From assembly GCA_965649765.1 (NCBI GenBank), contig OZ287756.1, forward strand, positions 9,858,001-9,922,000: 64,000 nucleotides of DNA, given 5' to 3'. This document shows, piece by piece, positions 2,293-29,200 of the stretch; within the stretch, counting starts at the first letter, position 1, and each line of letters starts with the position of its first letter. Position numbers and translations under genes: made by a program. A model generated the notes under the pieces. That model saw nothing but the letters and a program-made list of their open reading frames with translations. It was not told the origin of the DNA and did not search any database. The stretch comes from Bispira polyomma. Lineage: Eukaryota.

Positions 2293-5200
2293 GTGAGTTT
2301 AAACATGAACGATATTCTAATTTAAATATTTCTTATTGCTCATTGGAGGAAACCGCAATTTATTCGAGTAATAGATTAAATGCCTCATTTAAAGGGAACA
2401 TGTGTAATATGTGTACATCAGGGCATTAAACCCTCAGGCTTCTAGGGTTTCCCCTTTAGCTCAACATTTAGTGTACTGGACTGTTAATCTCAAGATCCAC
2501 AACAACCCAGGATCAAATCCCAGCAGTAGCAAGTTTCTTTATAAGTTATTTCTGTTGTTAACACCTGTACAAGTAATGTCAGATATACAGTAGACTCTCT
2601 GTAACTAGTTTTAACACCTCAAGTTCTGGGTGAACACACCTTTTATTGTTGTCCCACCCTTTAGTATACACCACCATGATACTGAGGAGAACTCACTCTG
2701 ACTTACAGTGGAATAGGGACACTTTATCTCTAATTGTACACTAATACCTCGCTCTAATTAATGTACACTATTCTCCAATCCTGAGAATCACTTCCACATC
2801 AGTTAGTATATAACTAACCCCGTTACCATCAGGTCAACGCATCTGATGAGCTTCTCCGTCAAAACCATGTACAAAATCCATATAGAGACCACTTGGCTCA
2901 TACAGTATGGCAATACCACTCTAATAAGTCCATCAGCTGTTCAAAACCATCATGACATCACAATACAGTGACATCACAGTCACCTAAGGTACAACTGGTT
3001 TCCAATAAAATAATTTAAACATATTGGAGATGGGATACTTCACCAAGGTTACTGGAAGAACATGACTCAAACCAAGTCATTCAAGCATGGTCAAGCAACC
3101 GTTACAAGACATATTGGAGTCCCGTGTTATATTTTTGTCACGTTTAATAATAAAAAAACCCAAAACCAGTACAAATCGAAATTTGTCGGTAATTGTAATA
3201 AATTTTCTGATCCCAATATTTAAAAATACTAGTTTTATATTAGATAAATGCAGTTACTTAAAGAGAGGAAAGAGACTTTCTATTACCTCTGTTAAACCCA
3301 GTAAGAGGACTGCTTCTAGTGCTTTCTCAATTGCTTCCCCTAAGTTATGGTATGGTCTCCCAGTTGAGCCGAGAACACTAGAAACTGTTTCTGGGTATGG
3401 GAGAAAATTTAAACCATATATCTTTAAAATCCCTTACGTTACGCATGTTAAAGATGCAAAATCCAAACACAATACAATGTTTTATGTTTATAAAATATTA
3501 AACTGATCTGCTTTGGTAATGTATCTGCACTCCATTCTATAACCACATATTGTAACCATAACTGGAATATCATCCAGAACACTGAAGAATTAACCAAAAT
3601 CTTCAATGAAAAACCATTGATTGACTATAGGAGATTACCCAACCTTAGGGATAGGCTCAGCAAATCCAAACACTTGCCTGTCTGCACCAGGCTGAGCAAG
3701 TGCACCTACTGCCCCAAAAATCAAGAAACTAGACACAGTTACAAGTTTCTCAACCAAACATATCTATAAATGTTTTAATCTACCACCTAAACACAAATTA
3801 ACTTGTGAACTGAATAATGTGATCTGCATCATCAATTGTACTAAATGTGGTCTCCAATACATTGGAGAGACCAAACGACCATTCAGACGGAGAATGTATG
3901 AACATTACAGAAGTGTTCATTTTTTTCTGCCACACAAATCAACCCCTGTCTCTAGACACTTTTCACAGGACCAACATTGTGAAAAACATGGTTTCAGTGT
4001 CATGTTAGGAGAGGACACCAACTCAGATTCCACCGCTAGGCATACATGCCAGGAACTATACTTTAATTGGGCCTTCCCCACCATACACCCTGCAGGTATC
4101 AACATATTTGTGTGAATGTATGCCCTCTTACCACACCCCTAACCCAGGTGCACTTATTTATTATCACATATTGTAATTGCTTATTTATTATTTAACCTTT
4201 ATAATAATCATCCAGAATTGTAATTTATTAACAACACAAGCTGTTACAATAATATGAAATACAGTTTTGTTTTTGTATAGTAATCATAAATTGTTGATAT
4301 ATATTGTTTTGGCCTACAGCCTACAGCAAAGGAAATCCAACGTTACTGTTATATCCCACTGATTCTGAGGGAAATGTGTGTGGCGTCGGAGACTTTGAGT
4401 AAGTAAAACAATTTTCTTTGTTCACCATAACTGGTTTCTGCTTCTTTGAACCAGAAAGTGTATTTTGAAGTAAATGAGAATAAAAGTTACAGAATTGAAC
4501 AGACACTTGTAGGAATTTTTTTTTTTAAACTTGAAAGTTGTTATAAAATGAGTTTAGGTGATAACTGCTGTACAGTGTGTGTGGGCAACTCTTCAATATC
4601 TGTCATTATTATCTGGGTTTTCATTAGAGATGTAAAGAGTACTTGAGTACTCATTAAAGAATAGAATGATGAACTATTTAGAGTACAAAATCAGAAAAAG
4701 AGTACTCTTTTCTTGTTTATATCAGCAGGTTTGCAAATATTGTCATGAAATTGACCTTGAATGAGTCATATCTTGTAACTTTTAAAGGAAAGTCATGCAA
4801 ATTCTGGTTATTTTATGCTTAAAGGAGTACTCTTTAAGGAGAAGAATAATGATGAAAGAGTATTCGGGTATAAAAGTTACTACTCAGCCTAGTTTTCATC
4901 CACTTCAGCTGCTAGAACTAGATAAACTAATCCTTTAAAAGTATATCTAAATGTAAATCCAAGTTTCATTTTAACCTTTTCGACCCAAAGAAAAAACTAT
5001 CACCGGGAACTGAAGGACATTTTTTGGGTAACTAAGGCTACAGGTAGCTGAAGTCACTAAAACACAAACCACAGACTACTTCCGGCATTCAATAATGGCC
5101 CTTGCATATAATTTTTAAACAAAGTAGTCTGTTGTACTAACAATTTAGATTGTTTATATTCCGCAGGGACAAATGATTTCTCTGTTTCAGAGATTGACCA

Positions 5201-8200
5201 TTTATTTAGTTATTATTTTGATAACCTGTTTGGGGGTAGATTACTTATTATTTGATATATAGAGAGACGTGTGACCGTTTCAAGGTGGACCATTTATTAT
5301 TTTTTCAGAGACAAGCCGTACCTGTTCTTCTTTGACCTGATTGACTGTGCAAAAGTAGGCGTGGCTGTGGCAGTAACGGGTTGTCCGACACCTCAGGTAC
5401 TGTATCTATTCATTCTGGTATACTGTGACCTAAGGTGGCCCGGTGGCCTGGTGGTTAGAAACCCTTACCTCACAGTCACTGGCCTCTCACCAATGCTTTA
5501 AATCCTTTTCATTCCTTCATGTAGAAACATTTATCAAGTACCAGTAACTGGCATTTTCCTATCTCAGGACATTAGGGCCACAGTGATTCTAGTGGTTAGA
5601 AGTGTGGGCTTCACCATCACTGGCCTCTCACCAATGTGGGTTCGAATCCCATTCGTTCCTTCATTTGGGAAATTTAAATTACATGCCATTAATCTAGGTA
5701 CTTGCCGTAAGTCGGTGGTTTACAGTGGCTTCAGCACTGCTTTCTTACACCCTTAAATCTGGCGGCTATGATATGACCTGAGATGTTGAAAGTGACTTAA
5801 GACCCGACTAAATTCAAACCCTGAATGGCGTAATGGTCTGATGCAAACACAATGTCTTTGTAACTACACTTGTCATAAGAAGTTCACATTTTTGGGCACA
5901 ATTTATTCATCAGTAATTCTAGTTAATAGACTCAAAAATGAACATATATGATAAAACAAAATTGACTTCCTAGTTGTGAGGTTTTTTCTAGCCTTACAGA
6001 GCTTATGCATATCAACTAGTATATATGTATGTTTTGTTATGTCCAAGAATTCAATTTGTAAAAGGTAAAATTAATACATCATTATAAATGAGCATTCTTC
6101 AGTTAACAGAATAAAATTAACTTTGAAGGAATTATGGCCTTGAATTTGACATATTTTATATTCTCTGTTACATTTTAAGTTTTAAGAAATGATAGCCTTA
6201 AATTTGACATGTTATAGATTCCCCAGTTAAATTTTAAGTTAATGGTGTCAACAGAGAAGTTTAGCACATCGTTATTATATTACTTTACTTCAGCTATAGC
6301 CACAGATGTAGTTTGAAATTGTGGTACGTTATATTTCAGTATTTCTACAAAGAATTCATAAATGCCAGTGGTAACAAATGCAGTAAATTTTACTGAAATA
6401 AGGCAAAACTGATCCACTGACAAACTGAGCAATCAATAAAATTACAAATTCAATCAGGAGAAGTAAAACGACAGCCATTTTTCGAAATATACCATCTATA
6501 CAATTTTTAACTGTTTATTGCAGCTTTGGAAAGATCGTGGGGAATTCCCAAATTGTATATGGTGTTATTGATTACTTGCGTGCGGACTGACTAGAAAATG
6601 CTGTGCTAGGCATTTCTATTGTTAATATAGGTAAACTTTTAATCTATGTCTCACCTATCAGGTGTGCGTGGCCCACTGCCCAAATAACAGTTGGCATTAG
6701 TTGCCCCAAGTAACTTTTAATTTATTATTGTCTCACCTGTCAGGTGTGCGTGGCTCAATGTCCCAATAACAGTTGGCACTACCTGCCACAAGTGTCATCA
6801 GAAACGTTCTACCTGGGTGGTTCAGATAAGAGCGGCAGGGAAGATATGATCTGTAAAAGTCATATAAACCCTGTTATCAGTAACAAGGTAGCATTGCTAG
6901 GCTACATTTAAATCTTCCTGGTTTATATTATTTACATTAGAAGAGATCTTGGTGACTTTAATTTTGAAAACGCATCATTATTATTTGAACCCCTGACTTC
7001 GTATATTCACAAACATTCTTAAAATACAATTCTTACCAGAATTTTCTTAACATCATCCAATCGCTTTTCTTTAAACATTATCTTCAGCCAATCTAATTGA
7101 CCAAAAAAAAAAAAAAAATTCCAATCAAATTTTTTTCCAAACACTTTCTTTAGCCAATTAGATTAGTTGTGACAAAATTTAAACAATAAGAATCATTGTG
7201 AATATACCACCAGCTCTAGCTGTGCATATAGAATAAATATCTTCTGGCTTCTACTGAATGTGCTCGATTAATAATTATGTATCAATGGAAATTTGAGCTA
7301 AATAAAATGTCATTATATTTTTTTAAATTTCGAGATCCTTCACTGGAATTATTTTTTTTGTACACTGTAAATCAGTTCAGTAGAGTATTTGTGTAATATC
7401 CCAGTGATAAACAAACAAACCAACAGGCACACAAACACTCCATCTTGGAGGAGGGTAACGATGAGAATATTTCTGTACTCGTTCGTAATCATTGGACCAA
7501 TGTATATTGTTACAGTATACAGGAGTTTAGCAAGAGTCAAATTTCCATATGCACAGAATATTAAAATTTCTTAAAGTTCATTTATTTTTGTTTTGATATA
7601 TAGTTTTTTGTACATAGGTCTGATTATCCTCAGAGAAAACTCAAATATCAATTAAATTTTTCTTACTCTTTATGGTTATTTTTCTATTGGTGAGGAGTTA
7701 AGTTTTAGTTGATGACTTTTTACAATGTTTGGGAAATAATCAAACTATGTGCATTAGTCACAGGCGCTAGGATACGAGTACTTATTGAGTGCATTGTTTA
7801 CTGAAGCTGTTGCATGGTAATTTGCGCTATATATTTATATAGAGGTAAGCCGCTTATACAACAACAGTCGCTTCTGCAAACAATAAGTAGGCACGTGACC
7901 TTAGGCGCCTGTGGTATAAGTCATATAAAATACGAATAGTTTTATAGATTTCTTTAAAAGTTGCATCCCCTGTTAAGTAGAACTTGAAGGAGACTAGAGA
8001 AATACCTCTAGTTTAGGATTTCCACTTGACAGCATAAATTTAAAAAAAAGAGGTCTTTGATGGACTACAGAATTTTTTGTTTTCAATATGAAAGGGAAAT
8101 CCCCTTCACAGAGTTCTACTTCAAGGGCTTTGACTGTATCTATATATATATTTTTTTTTACAAGATTATGGTATAGGAACATTATTATTTTTTATACTTC

Positions 8201-11200
8201 CTTCAATTATGGCATGGAGAGAGCTGGCTCTTAATTATATGTAATGTCTATAGTTATGTCTTGCATGTATTTCAACTTCCCTCTTAAATTACAGTAAAAC
8301 CTCTATTATCCACAAACAACAGCCATCGTTTTATACAAAAAAATACCTCCCATCACCATTTCGTGAACATTCTATTATCCAAATAGAATAAGACTCTCCC
8401 CAGGTATTTGGATACTAGAAGTTTTACTTTATGTAAGTTGTCAGGTAAAAGTTAGCAATTATATACATTGAAATCCATAAGGTGGCACAATGATATGTTT
8501 GCATTAAAGAAGATACCTGGAATCTTATTGGGCAACATCTACATCACCGTGATTACCACCACGATGTATGGTCTCTGTTAATATTTTTTGTACATTTTAT
8601 CTTGAAATAAAATTCTATTCACTTAATTAATCCTCCACATCCTCCTCCTCTGGTGATTAGATCTGCGTAACGGAGTGTCCGAACGAGTACTTTGAATGGT
8701 TCACAACGCATGCCGCCGAGTTAGTCGACAGTTCAGATAAATCTGGCAGGGATAAAATGCTCTGTAAATATGATGTAGACCCGGAAACGTCGTCTAAGGT
8801 AAAATAACAAACACCTGTTGTGTCCGTGTTGTGTTTATATTTTATATATATATATATTAGGGTAAGGAATCTAAAATTTGCCACTGTCTATCTAAAATTT
8901 GTCACCTGGAAAATGTTGTGTTTTTGGTAGAATTGTGGGTAATATTTGCCGAAATTGAGATTATTGGGGACTATTTTGCCTTACTTTACCTAAATTCCAG
9001 TTATTTTTCGCCCAGTTTTTATAGATTTAGTTTAAATTTTAGAGGGGTGATTAAATTTAAGATGAATTGGCGAATTTTTTTATTCCTTTCTCTAGGGTGT
9101 GCTTTTGTAGGTGATGTTCACACCGTAGTCTGCCAGGGCACTGGGTATTAACAAAAACATTCTTTTAAAACTCATTCTTAGACTTAGTGTTTTATCTCAT
9201 GGAGTTTGGAACTGCCTTTTCATGTTATTGTATATATTTAAACCATGTGTATACTAAATACCAACAATTATTTTCAACAAACTCTGTTAATCGCTAAATC
9301 CAGTGAGTTTATGTGTAAACTTAAATTTCAATAAAAGTCCGTCATCAGAGTAATAATGTCATGGCTTTTTTTCTGGATCTTAGAATAGAAATATTCTCCC
9401 TAGAAAAACTTCCCCAAAACAAAGTTCATCAGCTTCTAGTGCCATAATTGACTTTTAATTTCACTGCATGAGTCACCCCCACGTATTTAAACTGAAAGTA
9501 TTTTAAATCAGAATAAGAAGTTTTGATGCAACATTTTTTTTAGGTTTTAACTGTAAACTAAAAAAAAAAAGAGTTTAAGCAGAAAATGAGTTTAAGCATT
9601 AGCTTAAGTCTAAGAATGTTTTTTGTTAATACTATCCCTGGAGTATGTTGTTTTAGTTATATCTAACATTATTATTATATATACATGTGTAGTTGAAGTA
9701 GTTAAGTAGATAATGCTGCAAAGTCAAGTTCTGGTTTTCTGTTATTGTTGTGGAGAAACATCAGTTCAGTGCCACAAAAGGGTACTTCTTCTTTTAAAGT
9801 TTTATGCTATTGAGATTCGACTTAAATGGTTCAACTGTTTATGTGTATATATAAGTGTGCACTACATGTCTATTAACATTTATGGCTGAATTGCTATTAC
9901 TGTAGAATCTGTATATTAAGTCGAAATGTGCAAAATCCACAGGATTTAGTTCTACTTCTGGCTAACTTCCACTTGTACATACAGTCAAACCCCCTTTAAG
10001 TAGAACTCTCTTAAGTCGATTTCCTTTTTATCTGAAGAAACATATTTCCTTTTCAAATTCGCCCTGATGAGTTTAACATTCTGCTTAAGTAGAGGTATTT
10101 GTCCTGGTCCCTTGGGTTCCACTTAAAGGGGTTTAACTGTAGTTTAAAACTGCTATTTTTGAATATTGGGACTAGAAAATTAGTTCTACCCTAAACTCTC
10201 TCTGAATAGCCCATGCTTTCATAATAGCCCACCCCTAGTTTCCTATAAACACTGTTGATATTTTGAATAGAAAAATTACATTCTCTGTAGAGCCCATACC
10301 CTACATTTCCTAAATTGAAGTTTAAAGCCTATGGGCTATTGCGAGAGAGTTTAGGGTAGTTACAGAGACATTGGACTTACTATACTGGTCCTAGTTATAG
10401 AGAGTTTACTGTATATGTCTGTTCATATTGTTTCACATTGTTTTACATTGTTTTACATTGTTTTAAATATACTAACCCATGGTTGCAAGTGATGCTATTT
10501 AACATTTGCTTTTGTTATCGTAAGTTAATAAATGTTTTCTTATTCACTCCTATATTTCTTGTTTAATACACTTTACTTTTAGTTTCTACTTAATTTTGGC
10601 TATAAAGCCTTGTTTCCATGCAGGCGCATACGCATAATCTGTATACGCCATATACATCTATCAATAAAGATAAATAAATATATATGTATGTAAATTTACA
10701 TTTGTACTTCATTTTTCAGTCATAACTTTCTTATTTCTGGTCCGATTTAAAAAATTCTTTCGCAATTTTTGTTGTTTTTTATGCCGCAAAAATGTTGGCC
10801 ATATTTAAAAAGTTTACATAAAAAAGCCAAGTGCTTATTAAATACAATTACCGTGATCCCATATCCATTATAAATGGCTCCTCTGGCAATTTGTAACATA
10901 CCATATTTACGTAGCATATATGGATGCATTGAAACTTTATTAAGCAGCTATTAAATTTTGACGCGTACTTGAAGTGTGATGTGTAGGGATGACAGTTTTG
11001 CATGGCATGGAAACGGGGCTTTAGTATGTCAGTTCTAACACTTAATCGGCTTCTAGTTGTGGTGTATAGTTTGTAGTGCTTATGTTTAACCCTTATCACG
11101 TTTATTAGGTGTGTGTTCACAGTTGTCCCAAAAAATATTTCTCTTGGTTGGAAGTAGAAAGCGGTCTTTATTCAAGGTCTGAATTAGTATGCAGACATAA

Positions 11201-14200
11201 GGTTGACCCCAGTGAGTCTTCAAAGGTAAACTGTCAGTCTGTCGGTTGTAATTTAGAGTAAGGAATCTAAAATTTGCCACTCTATCTAAAATTCGCCACC
11301 CAGAAAATATAGACTTTCTTTAAATCCTTTCCTCTCAAGTATTACATGAGGGCAGTTTGACTTTGTAAATAGATACTGGTGCTGAGAAAAGTATTTGCAT
11401 AGAAAAGACTGGCCCAATACACACAGTAGAATCATAATGGATAAATAAGGCTAAAAATACCAAGACTTGTGAGCCAGTCTTTTTTTGTTAGAATTGTGAA
11501 TTTGTAAGTAAATATTTTCTGATATTGAGACTTTAGTGACAATTTTGCCTTACTTTCCTAAATTTCGGTTATATTTTTGCCCAGTCTTTAAGGATTTGGC
11601 TTAAATTTTATGGGTGGTGAGTTTTAGATACGGTGACACATTTTAGATTCCTTACTCTACTTGTATTCATTTGTTAAACTCTTCTCTTTTAAGAAAGGTT
11701 AAATTTGTCCATTTCCCAATGTCTCTGTGTGGACGCAGTAAATGATCTATTTTGGTAATCCTTTCACAGTTTAAATCTAATAATATATGAAATTTCGTTA
11801 AAAATAGTGGGGGGGGGGGGGGCACAGTGGCCTTGTGGTTAGCTTCACAATCACTGGCCTCTCACCAGTGTGGGTTTGAATCCAATTCGTTTTCCTTCAT
11901 GTAAAAAAGTTTGTCAGGTACTTGCTGTAGGTCGGTGGTCGGTGGTTTACAATGCTTCAGCACTGCGGTTTCTCCAATAAATTTGGCTGTCGTGATAAGA
12001 CATAAGCTGTTAAAAAAGCGAATTCAAACTCAAAAATAGTGACAATTACTGTTGAGTGCCTTCAGTTCAGTCAAACCTCAACAGATCAGGAAGTATACCT
12101 CTACTCAAGCAAAATTTCCACTTAACAATTGTAGATTGTAAAGAAAACTTAGGCCTTAGTTGAACTACAAATTTTTCTCCACATAGAATGTAAAATGCTG
12201 GTAATAAGGCAGGATAAAAGATATGCAATGTTACACTCATCTGTTAAATAAATACAGCTGTTTTCTCTAAGTAATAAAATGACAAAACAATAGTAGACCA
12301 GTTGTGCACTGCAGCTTCAGGTAAATTATTATTTCTTGTTGTTTTTTCATTTAATGATATAGTCAGTGCAAGAGTTGGTAGAAGATGAGGACTGTGCAGC
12401 TTATTACCTCAACAGCAGTGCTTGTAAGTACACATGAAATATTCTTTTTTTGTGCTCCTATTTATACTCAAGTCACCACTTTCACCCCTTTCAAAGCCGT
12501 TATTTCTCAGCCTTTCCTTCAGCAACCTGAAGATGGGAAATAGACTTTCTCTTTCCTCTATTAGACCCACTGGGAGGGCTGAATCTAGAGCTTTCTCTAC
12601 TGCTGCTCCTATGTTTTGGAATGGTCTACCTGCTGAGCTAAGATCGCTTGAAACACTCTCTCTGGGTTTAGAAAAAAGCTTAAAACCCATCTTTTTGAAC
12701 TCGCGTACCTTCCCATAGTTTCCCTCCCTGTACACCCCTACATCCTTCCTTATGACCTTGGCTATGTTTTTGGACTTCTCTATTAATTTACTGATTCTGT
12801 TGTTGCACTTGCCAATTAGCCCATTCCTGACTGTAACAGTCAAGTTACTGTCATTCCCCTAACTAAAGAGAAAGGCTTGAGGATGACACTATTTATTTAT
12901 CAATGTCCGCAAGGATATTTAGTCTGCCACTTTGGATAGGACAGTGACAGAGGACACCGCCATTTCAAGTGGTCATCCGTGCAAGTAGGCAAACGTGTGT
13001 ACACATCTTGCTCCAGGATGTTTTCCCACTAATAAAACTAGCCGCCGGTACCGTGAGTAGAACCCGGTACCTTCTGATCATTAGATCAACTCCCTAACCA
13101 CTAGTCCACGGGGATCTGTGTAGTCTTCCAAGGCCTAGTGGTTAGAGAGTTATTTCGATGATCAAAAGGTTCCCGGTATGACTCCCAGTTGGGGGGAGTT
13201 GGTCTGGTGGTTGTGTGGTTCCTGGTTCAAAACTCCCGCTAAATGCCGCTAGGTTCATTAGTGGGATAAACATTCTTGTGCAACATGTGAATACACCATT
13301 ACCTACCATATGATGATAATGCAAGTGGTTATAAGCGTCTGCTTCAAAATCATAGGCATCTCACCCCTGGGGATCGAATCCCACAGATTCCTTCTTCATA
13401 TGAGAAAGTTTGTCAGATACTTGCCGGTAGGTCGGTGGTTTCTCACATCACTAATCGTGGCCATCGTGATATGACCAATGCTACTGAAAGTGACGTAAAA
13501 CCCAAATAAATTCAAATGGAAGCGTTCATATGGTGCCACATTGCTAAGTGCATCCTCTGAGACACTGATGATACCTCAGAGACTTTCAAGTACAATGCCT
13601 ATATCTTCTGTTTCCAGTGGCTGGGCGATGTGTGCCCACCTTTATCAGTACGATCATTGACGAAGCGGGGGAGTTGGTGGACTCAGGAGGCCAGGTTATC
13701 GTGGACAGACTGAATAACACAGTGAATGGGACGGCTGTAGAGGAGGGCACTAAGTGAGTACAGTCACGTGTGAATTCCTATCAACAATAAGTAAGATTGA
13801 TGTGTTTATCATGTGTGTTAAGACTACCTCCTACTTATGCTTGTTCAAAAAACGATGCTGAGACATCCCTCAAAGTAACCATCAATCCCTGTGGGTTTTT
13901 TTTCTGAAACCCGAGGTAAGCATATATCTCCATGGCCATTGCGAAAATTTAGGATTTTTCCAAATTTCTGCAATGAATGTGGCACGACAGGGGATATCGA
14001 TATACTTTCGTTCATACGTGATATGACCAAAACTGACCTCACCTAAATACAGGAATCACTTGGCGATAAACGGCCATTTTCGATGTGCCAGATACATGCT
14101 GGGTAAGCGGAGATAATTGCAAGGCCAACATGAAAGTGGGAGCCAGCCATTGATCACTGGGGCTTTATTCTTTGATTTAATTTAGTCTTAGGCTTAAGAT

Positions 14201-17200
14201 TTTTGATTTTTGCCGTTAAAATATTGGTCTGAATAAGGCTCTGTTTGACATTAAGCAAAGAGCTCAGTGTTACCTTTGCACTTAACACTAAGACTAACAG
14301 AAGGCAGTCTTACATAGTTTAGACATATTCAATGTTAAGCTGGAGACTAAGTTAAAATTAAGACTTTTGTGAATACAGCCCATAGAGTATAAAAATAGCA
14401 AGAAATTGGTATATACAGTCAAACCAAACAGAAACCACTCCTACTTAAAGAGAACTGTCAATTGTCCAGTGAATTTTCCTCTGTACAAATAGGCTCTGTA
14501 GCAATACCACTCCTACAAGTTATGACCAGAGACCGCCTAAACTATTCCCAACAACAATATTTGACCTGTGTATAAGAGACCGCTTTTAAATATAACGGGC
14601 CAATTTTATAGCCTCATCTAAGGGTCCAGGTTTGATCTTCACTGCAGGCCTGGAGAGTGTACCCTTGGACAAGGTGCCTCACCCAAAGTTATACTTCTCC
14701 AGCCAGGTGTATCAATGGTTACATGGCTACTAACGCATGGTCACCGTGTTAGTTTCTGTGCCGTATGTGGCAGCATGGCTAGTATACTCCTTGAGAGAGC
14801 TGACAGTGAAACAATTGGTTGACAAGTGGGTAGAACCCAGGCTGGGAGCGTAAACTGTGTACAGCGCTTTGAAAGAAAGCACTATATAAATGCATTTTAC
14901 ATTTACAATTAGTTTAGTTTGTCATTCTTTGTATTATTGTATTGTATTATATATTTTTAATGTTTAGGACATGTGCTCAAAACACGCAACATCTAAATCA
15001 ATCCATCAATCCTGTGTCCTAGAACAAGATAACCTCAGGGTTGGCATCAGTAAGCAATGGCTGTGTTCACATCTTGCCCAATGATGTTATCCCACCAATA
15101 TGATAGGGATATGGAAGACTTTAGTGTTGTTATTTTCATATCATACAGCCACCATAACTTCATGACTTTCTCGCATGTCTATTCTGTGCAATCTCTCAGA
15201 TACCTTGCTCTGTTACTGAGTGCCAAGGACTATGGGATGAAGATTTACCAGGACGTCCGCGCCAGCTGGTGGATGATAATCATGTAAGTTCAGAAGCCAT
15301 ATATAGTATTTTCTGAATATTTTGTATCAAGAAATGCGATTGGCTGGTCAAATTGTCTGAAGCATTCTATTTAGTTTAAATGAAGAAAATTCTGAAAATA
15401 GCAGATTTTTTTGTGAAACTCAATATGGTCTGTGGGGGTCAAAAACGTTTCAAGACTTGTTTATTATTTTTTAAGTTTTCTTTATTTTAGTCAATCAAAT
15501 TTGTTGACACAGTTTTGAATAACTTTCTGTCTTTTGGAACAAGAATAATTGTGAATACCAAATATTCTGTTATCCTGTATAGTGTAATTAATGAATTTTT
15601 TTTACATATTCTAGTGTATAATTATTCCGACTGAAATGTATAATTGATACATACCATTTTATCATCTTTGATTGATATATTGTTACATTTTTTGTAATAC
15701 TGTCAGGGGCGAAGCCACAGTTAATGCCAATACGCCCAGGCGTACCAATTTAATAACAAGGAAAAAAAAAGATTTAAAAAAAATTAAAATTATTATTATT
15801 CTGTTTGTTTTAGTAGTCACATAGATTCATGTTTTTAAAAATTTTGTTTTGGTACCCAAATTAAAGCAAAATCCCCCCATGAATTTAATTTTTGGTAGGC
15901 CAAAAACAACGTAATTTTTTGTTTTAATTGGGGAGTACCAAATGAAAAATCCTGGCTACTCCCCTGACTGTATCAGTGGAAAAAAAGAGTTAAAAAGTGT
16001 GTACAATACAATCCTAGTAGGACCAATAGGGCCTATATTTGATAAGATTACAAAGTAGAACTTCTAAAATTGACAGAGATCTTGTTCACAGATCATAGAA
16101 CTTCAAGGTTAATGAATTAGAAGATGTATTTCTGTTTGAAACAATAGAAAACATCAATTTGGGAGAGCTGTAAATAAGTTTTATGAGATTGGATGTTCCA
16201 ATTACAGAAGGTTGGTCAAAAGAGTTTCTACTGTAAAAAACTACACTTTATATCTATCACAATTTTTAACACAAGGCAGGTAGTACAACATATTTTATAT
16301 CCCCCAGTGTATTGCATATAAATCCTGTATTTCATGACCGAGTGGATAATACATAGAAAATAACCACAAACATTCTCAGCCAATCAAATTCTTTGAAATA
16401 ATATTTTAAGCCAATGAAATTTGGTTGAGACCAAATTTTCAAACTAAGAATTTTTGTGTGTACACCTGTACATTCCAGACGCTGACTGTTTGCTCGTTTT
16501 TTCAGTGCCCTGGTTCAGTGTGCCATCTTGACCCTGATATACATGCTCCTAATGCGCTGGCTGGCGACCGCTATGGTCCTCATTACAATCCTTGCTTTTA
16601 TAGGCGGGTTTGGGTTTGGTAAGAACAAGCATGACCAGTAAACCCTATTTCACTTTATGGTCATTCCTTGCGGGAGTGGCTGTCCATGACTTTTGTCGAA
16701 CTCTTTTTGAATGCGTTTCGTTTATTCTTGATTTTATTTTTTCCTTTTCAGCAGTCATAATTGTGTGTTTCACAAGTTTTCACGTGGTTTTACTTTCAGT
16801 GAAGTTTTGTTTTATTTTTTCAGGAATTCCTTGTCGTGACTACTGTACAGTTTATCTTTGTAATTCAGTCTCAAACTTACACCTAATTGGCGATCTGACA
16901 AAGGCTCAAAACTACCATGTTTATCCATATAAATACTGCATTCTTACTTAACACAATGTAATACAGTAGACCACTGTCTTCTGTTTGATTAACCTTCTAT
17001 TATCCAAACCAAATCTTGCTCTCCCAGCATGTCTGGATGATAGAAGGTTGATTTTGAATTTGGGAGAGTGGAAATGTCACCATAAAATCAGAGTATTCGG
17101 ATAACAGAAGTTCGCAGGTGATGCTATTGTATTTATCGTAGATTTGTTTATGAGGTGACGCATAAATTTTCCATCAGCGGTGTACTACTTTTATCTTGGT

Positions 17201-23200: not shown

Positions 23201-26200
23201 GGTTATAGATAAACCGGAAGGGGTACCCAAGGAGATGGACCAAAATAAATAAAATTCACAGTGAGTGATTTATTTGTGGCAAGACTTATTTCTTACTCCT
23301 CTGCACATATGCACTGTTAGCCAATTTTGTAGTACATTGTTTTCCATAGGGCTGTAGGCCAGATGATATTCACCCTGTTCTGGCCCCTCATCCCTTGGGT
23401 CTTACAACTTGCTCTGTTTGGTTACTGGGGAGCGTCCGCTCTATACCTCGCCTCCATGGGACAACAGCAGTATGCACAGAGCTTCAAGAATGTTACTAAC
23501 ACCACCAATGATGATGGGAGCTACACGCTAGAAGAGGTGGTCACTACGACAACGGATTACGTACCATGCGACCCAACGGAAAATTCCACTGCTGGCTCTG
23601 TGTGTAACTTTCTAAAGAATGGGGGCGATGAGTAAGTATGAATGGAAAATATCTTGCTGTATATGTATATATATATATGTTCATTGAAAAATAACTTGTT
23701 TTGGGGTTAACCCGTTGTGTAGTCAATGAATATCAGTGCCATAGCAATGATTGTGTGGAAATATGTGAAAACCATTGCACCACTTTCATTTACTAAGCAT
23801 TTAATGTGTTTAAAAGATATATAAAACAGGAGGAATTTCTGTGAAATAACATGAAATAAATTTGTGTCAGACTATAAATATAGTATGAACCCAATTACCT
23901 GGTTTCTTTTTCAATGAAGTATATATGTAGTCAAAGTCCAAAAATGCTGCTGCTACTAAAAATATAAATATTCTTACTCACACAGTTTAGTATATCTATA
24001 TTTTTTAGATTCAAAGCACTGGGTAGTCCTTAATTTTTCTTTTAAATCAATTCTGTAATGCTGCGTAATCTCCGGCTGTACTAACAGATTCTAAGCTGCA
24101 AGGGTCCTCAAGTGTGCAACTTAGTTTAAAGAGATGGAACTTGAAAAATGCTTCATCTGATTCCAGCTCCACTGAATAATGGTTGGTCTTCTGTTTCCTG
24201 TATGTTGCGCAGTTAGTCTTGTGATCGGAAGGTCCCCAGTTTGACTGCAGCTTTATGCCACAGGGTTGATAATGGTGGGATAATATATCTTTAGGCGAGA
24301 TGGATCATGCCATTGTTGTAGGACATCTGATTAGTTTATCAATTGTTAGAATTGTTATTGCATGTTAGAAGACGCCTCGCATCAGTAAACCACGTTAATA
24401 AATATATATTTATTTCAATTGTACAAATAACAGTAATGTACAATAAGGTTTGGTAAATTGAAGGAAAAATAAATGATACAATAGATTAATGTCCTCCTTT
24501 GTTTTTCTGCTTCCAGGTACACCATTTACCTACAGTTTTACATGCTGTTCATGCTGTTCTGGGTGATGAACTTTATCATTGCCCTGGGTCAGATGACGTT
24601 AGCTGGAGCTTTCGCCTCCTATTACTTCGCGTTTAAGAAACCCGATGATATCCCAGCATTCCCTGTTACCGCAGCACTTTGGCGTAGTCTAAGGTATAGT
24701 GATTTATAATTTTTACGTTACTTATTTTTAAACACTGTTTTCAAATGCAATTTATGATCATCAGGGTGTTGTATTTGAGATCAGCTTTATTCAATTTACT
24801 GCCAATAATGGTTTTGGGGATAGTATAATTGTCATATTATAATCTTCCTGATTACACTGTATCTGTATCTGGCCATCATGGTTTTGTATTCGAGATAAGC
24901 TTTATTAGTAATATTATATATATGTACTAGTAAAATTTAAATACTAATGAGTTTCAAAAGTACCCAATGCCTGGCATATATTTTTACTATTCATTCCATC
25001 TGGAGACCCTGGATTTTGAAGCCCTAAAGTTTTTAGCGCTGAATTTGAATTATAATGTAGAGTTGGGGGTCGAGGTGGCGCTTGCTAATAATTACTGGTC
25101 TCTGGCCATAATGTGGGTTTAAATCGTGGTTGTTCCTATGTGTGTGGAAAACTTTGTCAGGTATCTTGCTGTGCAGTAGGTTGGTTGTTTTTTTTTACCA
25201 TTAAATCTGGCTGTTGTGTGATATGACCAAGTCTGGTGACAGCGATAGAGAACCCAACTAAATTCAAATTCAAATATGCGGTCAGCTTTTAAATGCATGT
25301 TTCCCCTCAAAAAATATAAGGTGACCTTATAGAGTTGAGCTTGAGTGTGAGTTGAGCTCCAGGGCCCGTATTCTCGAACGTATACTCAGCTTAAACTCAT
25401 ACTCAACTCAAATCTAGATTCTCTATATCTCTAAATACGGTATATATATTAAAAATCTGACTTGATATTTGAATTCAGGGTCAAAAGCTCTGTTAAAATG
25501 AATGGTCACAAGTCTAGGTTATTTCCATGTATAATGATTTCCACATGGCCTATTTTTGAGTTGAGTATGAGTTTAAGCTGAGTATACGTTCGAGAATACC
25601 GGCCCAGAGATTTTTATGGACCTTTTTATCTGGCAGTGCTAAGTCTGATCCAGTACGTTATAACTGTAATAAATGTGAACAAAGGATGTGTCAAATTTTG
25701 TGTAAAATTATTTCTATGCCCTATGTACTTGTATCTGTGATTGTATGGAACCATGACTTAACTAAAATGTGAACAAAATATGCGTAAAATTATCATAACT
25801 ATAACCACTACTATTAATATTGTATTGTCAAGGTGACCTAAAAGCCCAATACGGCTGGGCAATTTTTATTTACCTGTATTACATATTGTTGTCATTATAT
25901 TGTATTGCATGTCACTATAATAAATAAATATATAATATAGGTACAAAAACAAAGGTTGCATTTCAAACAATGGAGCACAGAGATTCTCCTGTCAAACATT
26001 GAAGGTAGACCAGTTGTTTGTCTAAATTCTTATTGGACCAAGAGGCAGCCTATGAGTGAAAGGGTGTTCCACACCCAGTTCAGGGGACAGCTCCTGAAAC
26101 TGACTCTCCAGCTTTGGCTTAGTTTAGAGAAGTCAGAAAATCCTAAATTAGTGTTACTTCGGGACAGGAGGGAATTAAGTATTACCAAAACTTAGTATCA

Positions 26201-29200
26201 CAGCTTGTCTTTGGATGAGTAATCAGGAAATAAAGCACAGAACTGAATATTGGTCTTCATATTTACCCCTCCCTAACATCAGTTTTTGCCGAGCTACACC
26301 CTCTAATCCCCAGTAGTGATATAACAGCAAGTACCTATTTCTTGTTTCCTTTCAGGTTCCATCTGGGGACTCTTGCCTTTGGAGCACTGATCATTGCCAT
26401 CATCCAGATAATCCGTGTGATGCTGGAGTATGTCGATAGTAAACTTAAGGGAGCAGAGAACAGGGTGGCAAAGTTCTTTATCAAGTAAGTGATGTAAATA
26501 ACCCCTTACAGATTTTTTACGTCCCCGTGGTTAGGGAGTTGGTCTGGTCATCGAAACATATATAAAGCCCGGACAAGGCGCAGAAATCCTGATAAGATTT
26601 CCTTTGCGTTCTAGTCTATTCAACTTCAATTCACAAATTCAAAATTCATTTCAATCACAGTGTCTCCTACAGTGCACTAAAACTTTGGACAGTCTGCCTC
26701 AAGAAATTCGTACTGCTGCTACCTTTCCATCCTTTTGAAGCAAACCTACGACATATTTGTTTGTTAAGGCTGTCTCTCCCTAGTTATGTATTCATTTCAA
26801 TGTCTCCTGGGATATGACCAGCTTCTGTTAAAGGACATTACGAAACTTGAATATGATCATGTAATATAGATTAGCAGGTCCCGTGTTCCACTCCCGGTAC
26901 CGGCCACCAGTTTCCTTTGGTGGGATAACATATCCATTGGCAAGATGTGAACACAAGTTTGCCTAGTGGTTCAAATGACCACTTAAAATGGCGGTCCACT
27001 GTCACGTGAGTTCTATCTCCAGTGGTAGATTAAAGATCCTTGGGGCCATTGATAAATGGTCATCCTTAAGCCTCGGCGCCTCTAATGGCTGCCCATGAGG
27101 AAGCACATTTCAAATGACCTTATGTTGTACAAGTGCGCTACAACAAATATATGTTATGTCGAGTAGAACTCAACAATTAGGGTCATTCCACAGTACCATG
27201 ACTTTTTTTACTTTTCTTCAGTAGCACACATTTGCAGCATCTTAGTAAGTTTATATTTTATTGAAATCACCTTGTCTATGCCCGTAATATTATGGCTGTT
27301 TGCCTAATAGTATGATCAGGATGTTATGGCTTTTTGAGTTCTAGAGACTAGATCAGATTTAGATTACAGCAGAAGTCATTGTGTTTAAAAAATAATACAC
27401 AAGACTGTTAGGAAATGCCGGAAGTCATCTGTGGTGTGTGTTTTAGTGACTCCAGCTGTCTGCAACTTGTAGCCTGGCAATTTCCTTCAGTATATTTAAC
27501 TACTGTTCTATTGGGGGTAAAGGGTTGATAATGGACATTCAGTTACTGTATAATTATTTTTGTGCTTGGAAGTATGAGCTCTGCCATCTTCCGTCCTTGT
27601 GTTCTTTTTTGTGCATTCAAAGGAAAAGTATTGCAGATATATCTTCTATACTGGTTTTAACAACTAATTGTGAAATTGGAATTTATTTCACTAATTAGAC
27701 ATGTTTGTTCAAAGGGTAAATACTTTGAGATGTCACAAGTTTGACTGTAACTCTTTTGTTCTCCTTTCAGATGTCTCAAGTGCTGCTTCTGGTGTCTTGA
27801 AAAAGTCATCAAATTCATTAACAAAAATGCATACATTCTGGTAATTATTTCCAAATAAAATTTTAGTAAATCGGTAAATCTTAGAGTTTGAATTGTTAAA
27901 TATATATTAAAATTTGTGTATATTCAAAGTTTCATTATTTTCTATTTCTTTGTTGTCAAGTAACTCTAATCAGTGATTATTAAAAAAGTTTGAAACTTGT
28001 TCAAGTCAAGAGAGTAATTTGCTTTGTGGTTTAATTAATATATATATATTCTCTTTATTTTAAGACGGCCATATATGGGTACAATTTCTGCAAATCAGCA
28101 TTCACAGCTTTCAACCTGATTCTCAGGAATATCGTCAGGTAATTCTATGTTTACTGTAACTTTTTCAAATTAGTTTTTGCTGTTTAAATTGTGTTTTGCT
28201 TTTGTATTGATTAACTGTAAAGTTTTCTTGTGACTTTAATACAGATGTATGCTTAATAATCAAGTAACTTTATGTTATTTGTCATGACATATTTTTATTT
28301 ATCATTCTGTTCACACTGTTATTGTAACTACATGTAGAAGGAAAGAAAAACCCTAAAAAATAAAATGATGGCCAACAAAAAAAGATTATCTCAAAATAAT
28401 AAGTCAACAAAAAAGATAAGTCAATATCAATTGAGACACTTAACTCACTTTATCGAGATAAATAAGTTTGACAAACAAGACAATAATTTTACTCCTGACA
28501 TATATTTGTATGTGTCTATTTTTAGAGTGGCTGTGGTCGATAAAGTGACAGACTTCATCGTCTTCATAGGCAAACTGGTGGTTGTGGGAGCTGTCTGTAA
28601 GTCTACACATTGTCTTACTATGTGATATACATATATTACCGCCAAACCCCTTTAAGTAGAACTCTGATAAATGGAATTTCTTGTTAAGTAGAAGTTATTA
28701 TAAGGTCCCATGGCTAAAATTTACCCTGTTAAATAGAACAAATTGTTATGGTCCCTTAACATTGACTTAACAGGTATTTAGATGTATATTATTATTATCA
28801 TTTATATGTCAACCAGTAGTTAACACTGTCACTTAGGAATGTGGAGGACCTGGGTTCAATCCCTGAGACTGGTTCAGTAAAATATACATGGCTTCCTTCT
28901 GTCACTGGCTCCTATATGTGGACATGTTGATCAATGGTGTCGTCCCCAACCTTCTGACTCCACAGAAATCTTTTAGTGCTTATATCTGTATGTCTCTTTT
29001 CATTGAGTTAAGTTTTTAAAAAATGTTAAAAAATGGTAACTTCATTTTAAGAATTAGGAAATAAGGCAGATTAAATTTGTCCTTTTAAAATTTTTTTTAT
29101 ACAAATTAATAGATAATGAATTTGAATTTGGATATTTAACGTCCACTCTAGTACCTTTTAGTAGGTTATATTAGGATGGGTAGTTGGAAACGCTGGAGGA

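What the first reader, a model, noticed from the sequence alone, without database searches (positions are those of the whole stretch)
6744..11225. Cluster A: three interchangeable versions of the Cys-rich first extracellular loop, with exclusivity not enforceable by frame
A1, A2 and A3 (48, 46 and 39 aa) all keep [VI]CV..CP, a third Cys, a P and a final K, but differ in length and charge. Only A1 has an N-glycosylation sequon (NNS). All three are phase 0-0 and multiples of 3, so double inclusion or skipping would stay in frame. The introns between them (about 1.8 and 2.3 kb) are too long for simple steric exclusion unless branch points are distal. An active selection mechanism is therefore implied (inference). 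Established: the equivalent first loop of human SLC44A2 carries the HNA-3 alloantigen, so this is an exposed interaction surface.
Basis: partly seen in the sequence, partly recalled or inferred. Interest (0 to 1): 0.8.

Follow-up and report, generated by a model that had tools for sequence, protein, structure and literature searches.

The report
Three alternative loop exons in a choline-transporter-like gene
A worm-like invertebrate's SLC44/CTL-type membrane transporter gene carries three old, intact, interchangeable copies of the exon for a cysteine-rich piece of its outer loop. They probably give three surface variants of one transporter, but no RNA data could be found to show how the copies are used.

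Summary
A1 (6744-6887), A2 (8661-8798) and A3 (11109-11225) are homologous exons of 48, 46 and 39 codons. All are AG/GT-flanked and phase 0-0. They lie between constitutive exons 5309-5396 and 12363-12423 of a CTL2/4/5-like gene.

A related species (L001) has the same three exons in the same order, while its introns are saturated, so all three are under purifying selection. They change 2 to 15 times faster in protein than the flanking exons. Two further species carry three and at least two copies. Seven other loci, including this genome's neighbouring paralog, carry one.

Every homolog seen in spliced context has one such module. One copy gives the loop 8 cysteines, so one-at-a-time use is likely. 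It is not shown, because no RNA run or transcript was reachable.

Frame/NMD, steric hindrance and U12 incompatibility can be ruled out as enforcers. I found no conserved docking or selector element. All inter-intron pairings lie in high-copy repeats, including the MITE behind A2 and A3.

The human HNA-3 residue aligns with the constitutive exon just after the cluster, not with the A module.

The scan had already noted this stretch (s1-680866) and the gene (s1-680827). Verdict: a new member of a known kind, of moderate interest.

The parts
5309..5396 (+). Constitutive upstream exon (88 nt). It ends on a full codon and encodes ...[29 protein letters not shown].
   Evidence: It is 97% identical in protein to the L001 ortholog.
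6647..6711 (+). A0: an 82-nt-offset tandem partial duplicate of A1's polypyrimidine tract, AG and first 50 nt. The exon-like part is 6662-6711. It reads [12 protein letters not shown] then TAG and has no GT donor. Splicing to this acceptor would give a 226-nt, frame-shifting, stop-containing exon.
   Evidence: (family D2, 86% identical). No separate A0 copy was detected in L001.
6744..6887 (+). A1: alternative exon of 144 nt / 48 aa, net charge 0. It carries sequon NNS plus a junction sequon NKS.
   Evidence: The L001 ortholog is 70% identical and keeps a sequon (NDS) at the same place.
8661..8798 (+). A2: alternative exon of 138 nt / 46 aa, net charge -5.
   Evidence: The L001 ortholog is 74% identical, with dN 0.136.
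11109..11225 (+). A3: alternative exon of 117 nt / 39 aa, net charge +1. It is the most divergent copy.
   Evidence: The syntenic L001 exon is 105 nt, 44-49% identical depending on the alignment, with dN 0.349.
12363..12423 (+). Constitutive downstream exon (61 nt), [20 protein letters not shown]. The human HNA-3 position (R154) aligns here.
8858..9094 (.). MITE-family copy 60 nt downstream of A2.
   Evidence: depth about 127,000 against about 20 for unique sequence.
11254..11659 (.). Fold-back MITE copy 29 nt downstream of A3, with 58-nt terminal inverted repeats.
   Evidence: (at least 2755 candidate copies in the genome).
8088..8142 (.). Arm of an inverted repeat with 9976-10031. The pair brackets A2 and lies in a high-copy repeat.
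10045..10126 (.). Arm of an inverted repeat with 12066-12147. The pair brackets A3 and lies in a high-copy repeat.

Best explanation
What it is. A1, A2 and A3 are tandem duplicates of one ancestral exon of a CTL2/4/5-type (SLC44A2-like) transporter gene. Each encodes the same three-cysteine module ([VI]CVxxCP...C...P...K) that follows the conserved GCPTPQ motif at the start of the large first extracellular loop.

How it is probably used. Each mature mRNA most likely carries one of the three. That would give transporters with the same membrane core but a different length, charge (about 0, -5, +1) and glycosylation at one exposed patch.

Shown here: the exon anatomy, the homology, conservation of all three exons in a second species, and purifying but relaxed selection.

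Inferred: one-at-a-time use, and the way it is enforced. My best guess is that choice is made by cell-type-specific splicing factors acting on the diverged exons and their close flanks. Products with zero or two modules (5 or 11 loop cysteines) would be removed as misfolded protein rather than at the RNA level. A docking/selector RNA device is possible, but nothing found here supports it.
For: Anatomy and homology.

Family: PF04515 matches exons further down the gene. The N-terminal exons align to CTL2/4/5 proteins.

Conservation: L001 has orthologs of 5309-5396, A1, A2 and A3 in the same order. All are AG/GT-flanked and phase 0-0. Each is closer to its counterpart (70, 74, 46%) than to its paralogs (29-43%).

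Selection: synonymous sites are saturated, and 100-nt intron flanks are no more alike than shuffles. Even so, dN is only 0.14-0.35.

One module per protein: homologs seen in spliced context (P0011, P0009, P0024, P0039 and the full-length set) have one module between CPTPQ and xVxxLVxDxDC. In the 1.8-billion-protein search every CTL-like hit matched in a single stretch.

Cysteine count: the loop has 8 cysteines with one A exon.

Recurrence: other lineages carry 3 (L006) or at least 2 (L009) copies at the same intron position.
Against: There is no RNA evidence of any kind. The one run search returned only DNA-like holders, and no transcript or annotated isoform of a cluster-bearing species turned up.

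All exon lengths are multiples of 3, so multi-inclusion or skipping would stay in frame and cannot be excluded.

Three modules would again give an even cysteine count (14).

A3 is weakly conserved (dN/dS about 0.5 on 35 codons) and could be decaying.

No selection mechanism was identified.
Confidence: 0.6

Rival explanations
1. The exons are independent cassette exons rather than mutually exclusive ones. Any combination, including none, two or three, is spliced in frame, and the loop simply varies in the number of modules.
For: All three are phase 0-0 and multiples of 3. No RNA-level enforcing device was found. Three modules give an even cysteine count.
Against: No homolog in any species shows a tandem repeat of the module. 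Zero or two modules give an odd number of loop cysteines.
Confidence: 0.17
2. The exons are mutually exclusive, and choice is made by competing RNA base-pairing. One version uses a docking site with selectors, as in Dscam1, 14-3-3zeta or srp. Another uses repeat-derived inverted repeats that loop out A2 or A3.
For: Inverted repeats bracket A2 (8088-8142 with 9976-10031) and A3 (10045-10126 with 12066-12147; 8858-8914 with 11605-11659). Tandem exon duplication tends to create competing structures (PMC6071210).
Against: All of these arms lie in high-copy repeats, and the MITE has at least 2755 candidate copies. In L001 the same MITE family sits at non-orthologous places inside the A1-A2 intron. 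No intronic block is conserved between the window and L001. No splice-site-proximal window pairs with any intron better than shuffled controls (best z = -2.0). These tests have limited power: only two species, Watson-Crick seeds, and the last intron of L001 missing.
Confidence: 0.15
3. Only one A exon is really used, and the others are unused duplicates on their way to decay.
For: A3 evolves fast, and there is no expression evidence. The truncated copy A0 shows that abortive duplicates do arise here.
Against: A1, A2 and A3 all keep open frames, all three cysteines, AG/GT sites and phase in two species whose introns and synonymous sites are saturated. A1 and A2 have dN far below the saturated dS.
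Confidence: 0.08

Closest known systems
Tandem-duplicated mutually exclusive exon clusters of invertebrates (Dscam1 exons 4/6/9, 14-3-3zeta, srp, Mhc)
   Same: An array of homologous, same-phase exons made by tandem duplication. It swaps part of an extracellular or functional module, and the cluster persists across species.
   Different: There are only three members, and the host is a transporter. No docking or selector sequences were detected. One-of-N inclusion is not shown.
Mutually exclusive homologous exons of vertebrate SLC44A2/SLC44A5
   Same: Same gene family, and the alternatives are homologous exons (PMC4494069).
   Different: The vertebrate pair encodes the cytoplasmic C-terminal tail at the 3' end of the gene, not the first extracellular loop.
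Alternative loop-1 segment in crab CTL (Eriocheir sinensis isoform X7 against X1-X6)
   Same: In automated RefSeq models, an invertebrate CTL2/4-like gene swaps a stretch of the same first extracellular loop.
   Different: The swapped stretch is a later part of the loop, after the RC[IV]P motif. The [VI]CVxxCP module is constant in the crab and tick isoforms.
Human SLC44A2 loop 1 as an interaction and antigen surface (HNA-3, R154Q; integrin alphaIIb-beta3 binding)
   Same: The same large first extracellular loop. One residue change there alters antibody and integrin binding (PMC9994479; PMC7253179).
   Different: R154 lies in VAEVL[R/Q]DGDCP, which aligns with the constitutive exon 12363-12423 next to the A module. 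Nothing is known about ligands in this animal.

Membership tests
SLC44 / choline transporter-like (CTL) family | Choline_transpo domain (PF04515) in the C-terminal half of the protein | tested here: met
   Exon-wise matches above the cut-off at window 24503-24700, 26339-26491, 27685-28002 and 36945-37061.
SLC44 / choline transporter-like (CTL) family | N-terminal TM1 (RSCTDIICC...) followed by a large Cys-rich first loop with GCPTPQ-[VI]CVxxCP | tested here: met
   tblastn of P0011, P0009, P0024 and P0039 against the window. Alignment A3.
Mutually exclusive exon (MXE) cluster | Neighbouring exons that are homologous, of similar length and of the same phase, with their own splice sites | tested here: met
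Mutually exclusive exon (MXE) cluster | All members kept by selection | tested here: met
   All three have orthologs in L001 with intact frames and splice sites, while the introns are saturated. The case is weaker for A3.
Mutually exclusive exon (MXE) cluster | Exactly one member included in each mRNA | not testable with these tools
   No RNA run was found. No transcript-derived protein of a cluster-bearing species was found. Searches needing joined exons were left out.
MXE enforced by frame / NMD | Exon lengths are not multiples of 3, so double inclusion or skipping gives a premature stop | tested here: not met
   The lengths are 144, 138 and 117 nt. The same holds in L001, L006 and L009.
MXE enforced by steric hindrance | The intron between alternatives is too short, or the branch point lies within about 60 nt of the upstream donor | tested here: not met
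   The introns are 1773 and 2310 nt. In the other species they are 923 to 6353 nt. Branch points were not mapped.
MXE enforced by U2/U12 incompatibility | One intron has U12-type splice sites ([AG]TATCCTT donor) | tested here: not met
   The donors are GTACTG, GTAGCA, GTAAAA and GTAAAC, and all acceptors end in AG.
MXE by docking-site / selector RNA pairing | A conserved intronic docking site that is complementary to a selector next to each variable exon | tested here: inconclusive
   No conserved intronic block between the window and L001. No above-shuffle duplex at any splice-site window. The only inter-intron complementarities are repeat-derived. Power is low, with two species and L001's last intron missing.

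The most novel reading that the evidence does not exclude
The first-loop module of this CTL lineage may be a fast-evolving recognition surface that several lophotrochozoan lineages have multiplied independently. The window species and L001 share three copies, L006 has three, and L009 has a younger pair. On this reading the animals deploy it one copy at a time without any known RNA-level enforcing device, since the exons are in frame, the introns are long and the splice sites are U2-type. That would point to a still undescribed way of ensuring single inclusion, and to a ligand-binding or adhesion role for CTL ectodomains outside vertebrates.
Probability: 0.25. Interest if true: 0.65.

Novelty: new member of a known kind. 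Interest (0 to 1): 0.45.

Why it matters
The outer loop 1 of CTL2-type transporters is the part that antibodies and an integrin recognise in humans. Here one gene appears to offer three versions of the neighbouring module, differing in charge, length and glycosylation. They have been kept for a long time and evolve several times faster than the rest of the loop.

If the exons are used one at a time, the ectodomain has a job of its own, such as adhesion, recognition or regulation, that is tuned by splicing.

The cluster would also be a clean case for asking how single inclusion is achieved when frame, intron length and spliceosome type cannot do it.

The papers I searched did not describe alternative exons at this position of an SLC44 gene.

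Tried and rejected
1. RNA evidence. The single run search used a 5951-nt, mostly intronic stretch and returned only DNA-like holders. Laying those runs confirmed the assembly and showed which intron parts are high-copy repeats, and said nothing about splicing.

2. Annotated isoforms.
- A word search with the three exons found one genomic ORF, P0001.
- The profile search of 1.8 billion proteins found 41 hits, mostly genomic exon ORFs.
- Two further word searches with alignments of homologs plus separate exon rows found no protein of this species or a close relative.

3. PDB. Exon A1 finds no CTL chain, only a weak unrelated match (E 0.65). A homolog's N-terminus matches CTL1 (7wwb, 9qu3) only over TM1, so the loop could not be mapped on a solved structure.

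4. Conserved docking or selector elements. Sensitive blastn of the window against L001 found only exons and repeat copies. A full sliding duplex scan timed out. A reduced scan of splice-site windows gave nothing beyond shuffles.

5. The MITE as a selector. I give it little weight. It is very abundant, and in L001 it sits at non-orthologous places.

6. Exon phylogeny. Only the A1 and A2 ortholog pairs are resolved. The sequences are too short to date the L006 and L009 duplications.

7. Rfam. Nothing relevant in 4000-13500.
Full report
**Observation**

Each follows an AG and is followed by GTA.

The exon before the cluster is 5309-5396. It ends on a full codon...TGCPTPQ. The exon after it is 12363-12423 and begins on a full codon, [11 protein letters not shown].... 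The A exons are therefore phase 0-0 and multiples of three. The introns between them are 1773 and 2310 nt.

The copies are homologous well beyond chance. BLASTP gives E = 1e-12, 3e-10 and 8e-6 for the three pairs. Invariant columns are C2, V3, C6, P7, S27, R32, C37, P43, S46 and K48.

Net charges are 0, -5 and +1. Only A1 has an internal sequon (NNS), and it creates a second one (N-K-S) across its junction with the next exon.

Unitigs of three DNA runs from two samples match the assembly without a difference over A0/A1, A2 and A3.

**Gene and organism**

The window is G000:C9:9858001-9922000 of a 1.04-Gb genome.
- Exons further down the gene match PF04515 (Choline_transpo) above the cut-off.
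- The N-terminal exons align to CTL2/4/5-type proteins: TM1 at 2217-2294, then 4319-4399, 5309-5396, one A exon, 12363-12423, 13614-13751 and 15201-15284.
- The A module therefore lies at the start of the large loop between TM1 and TM2.
- The closest named N-terminal fragment is from the annelid Lamellibrachia satsuma.
- Earlier notes of this scan call the genome a fan worm. I did not verify that.
- A profile of the A exons finds only A1, A2, A3, the partial copy A0 and one exon of a tandem paralog about 110 kb upstream. That paralog has a single A-type exon.

**Conservation**

A 51-aa genomic ORF (P0001) led to locus L001, from a long contig of an ENA assembly.

L001 holds orthologs of 5309-5396 (97% protein identity), A1 (70%), A2 (74%) and A3 (44-49% depending on the alignment). 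They are in the same order, all AG/GT-flanked, phase 0-0, and 141, 138 and 105 nt long. Each exon is closer to its counterpart than to its paralogs, which are 29-43% identical.

Between the two species:
- synonymous sites are saturated;
- 100-nt intron flanks are no more alike than shuffles;
- blastn finds no conserved intron block.

The exons are thus islands of constraint. dN is 0.023 and 0.059 for the flanking constitutive exons, against 0.136 (A2), 0.228 (A1) and 0.349 (A3). All three are under purifying selection, but the module changes about 2 to 15 times faster than its neighbours.

The charge pattern is kept in L001: A2 is acidic and A3 basic (-3/-4/+3). A1's sequon is also kept, as NDS.

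**Other lineages**

I scanned loci fetched through exon-sized ORFs from the large protein search with a profile of the A exons.

| Locus | A-type exons | Notes |
|---|---|---|
| L006 | 3 | Each 117 nt, between orthologs of both constitutive exons |
| L009 | at least 2 | 120 and 123 nt, 62% identical to each other; the contig ends after them |
| L003, L004, L007, L011, L012 | 1 each | Seen between orthologs of both constitutive exons. L012 has lost the intron before the A exon |
| L002 | 1 seen | The contig ends soon after the exon |
| L010 (upstream paralog in this genome) | 1 | Only the upstream constitutive ortholog was seen in the 10 kb fetched |

All of these exons have AG/GT sites and lengths that are multiples of 3.

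A tree resolves only the A1 pair (99/99) and the A2 pair (93/92). It hints at a within-lineage duplication in L006 (84/76). So duplication of this exon has happened more than once. The three-copy state is shared at least by the window species and L001.

**Is it one at a time?**

I could not obtain RNA evidence.
- The single run search returned only DNA-like holders.
- No transcript-derived or annotated protein of a cluster-bearing species appeared in three word searches or the large profile search.

The indirect evidence is this.
- Every homolog seen in spliced context has one module between CPTPQ and xVxxLVxDxDC.
- Every CTL-like hit of the large search matched in a single stretch.
- Each A exon brings three cysteines to a loop that has five constitutive ones. 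One module gives 8, none gives 5 and two give 11.

Three modules would give 14, so the parity argument is suggestive only.

**How might exclusivity be enforced?**

- Frame/NMD is excluded, because all lengths are multiples of three in all four cluster-bearing species.
- Steric hindrance is excluded for practical purposes, because the introns are 0.9 to 6.4 kb.
- U12 incompatibility is excluded, because all donors are U2-type GT and all acceptors AG.

For RNA pairing I found the following inverted repeats:
- 8088-8142 with 9976-10031, bracketing A2;
- 10045-10126 with 12066-12147, bracketing A3;
- 8858-8914 with 11605-11659, also bracketing A3.

All of these arms lie in segments whose DNA depth is hundreds to thousands of times that of unique sequence. 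The MITE behind A2 and A3 has at least 2755 candidate copies in the genome. In L001 the same family lies at two non-orthologous places inside the A1-A2 intron.

Windows of 60-75 nt around every acceptor and donor pair with no intron better than shuffled versions (best z = -2.0).

A conserved docking/selector system is therefore not supported. The test is weak, though: two saturated species, L001's last intron missing, and a full duplex scan that timed out.

My working model is inference only. Trans-acting factors choose among the diverged exons, and products with the wrong number of modules are lost as misfolded protein.

An 82-nt tandem duplication, 6647-6711 against 6729-6793 (86% identical), copies A1's pyrimidine tract, AG and first 50 nt. 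The upstream copy reads [12 protein letters not shown] followed by TAG and has no donor. Splicing to that acceptor would add 82 nt, shift the frame and bring in a stop.

It is present in both DNA samples. L001 shows no separate copy of it. It may act as a decoy acceptor that lowers productive A1 use. That is untested.

**Comparison with what is known**

- Vertebrate SLC44A2 and SLC44A5 have mutually exclusive homologous exons, but for the cytoplasmic C-terminal tail (PMC4494069).
- RefSeq models of a crab CTL swap a later part of loop 1, while the [VI]CVxxCP module is constant in the crab and tick isoforms.
- The general kind, a tandem-duplicated same-phase exon cluster, is well known from Dscam1, 14-3-3zeta, srp and Mhc. 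Duplication is thought to create competing RNA structures as a by-product (PMC6071210).
- Human HNA-3 (R154Q) is in loop 1 (PMC9994479) and affects integrin binding (PMC7253179).
- The mutagenesis primer printed in PMC7253179 translates to VAEVLQDGDCP. This aligns with [11 protein letters not shown] of the constitutive exon 12363-12423. The human residue therefore maps next to the A module, not inside it.

**Verdict**

The reading as a mutually exclusive cluster is likely (about 0.6) but unproven. The claim that an active selection mechanism must exist is an inference for which I found no physical candidate that is conserved.

This is a new member of a known kind. Earlier notes of this scan list several similar clusters in other genes of this genome. 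Interest is moderate.

Noticed in passing
window 6647-6711: An 82-nt tandem partial duplicate (A0) of A1's acceptor and first 50 nt, with an in-frame TAG and no donor. It could be a decoy 3' splice site giving an unproductive 226-nt exon. It is present in both DNA samples, and L001 shows no separate copy of it.
   Followed up: partly
L011 15535-15564 (NCBI GCA_021962125.1): In a species with a single A-type exon, a short partial copy of that exon's 3' end (MLCKYNLDPLSATVS) lies about 80 nt downstream. Small abortive duplications of this exon therefore seem to recur.
   Followed up: no
G000:C9:9749907-9785800 (L010 covers 9742000-9751999): A tandem paralogous CTL gene lies roughly 70-110 kb upstream of the window. 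It has a single A-type exon (L010 7908-8030). Two more CTL-like loci lie on contig C3, and neither has a detectable A-type exon.
   Followed up: partly
L012 4626-4853: In this species the intron between the GCPTPQ exon and the A-type exon is missing, and the two are fused in the genome.
   Followed up: no
window 5608-5657 and 11842-11891 (also 5470-5495): Copies of a repeat with a tRNA-like GGTTCGAATCC box, probably a tRNA-derived SINE. DNA depth there is thousands of times that of unique sequence.
   Followed up: no
P0139 against P0092 (Eriocheir sinensis isoforms X7 and X4), residues about 165-235: The RefSeq isoforms differ by a swapped stretch in the later part of loop 1. This suggests a separate pair of alternative exons in a crustacean CTL gene.
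   Followed up: no
window 6885-6887 with 12363-12365: Joining A1 to the next exon creates an extra N-K-S sequon. The A1 isoform alone would then carry two potential N-glycans in this stretch.
   Followed up: partly
L006 7744-7838 and 8990-9137: Complementary simple repeats, seen as hits that shift in 2-nt steps, flank the third A-type exon of this species. They are low-complexity, and their significance is unknown.
   Followed up: no
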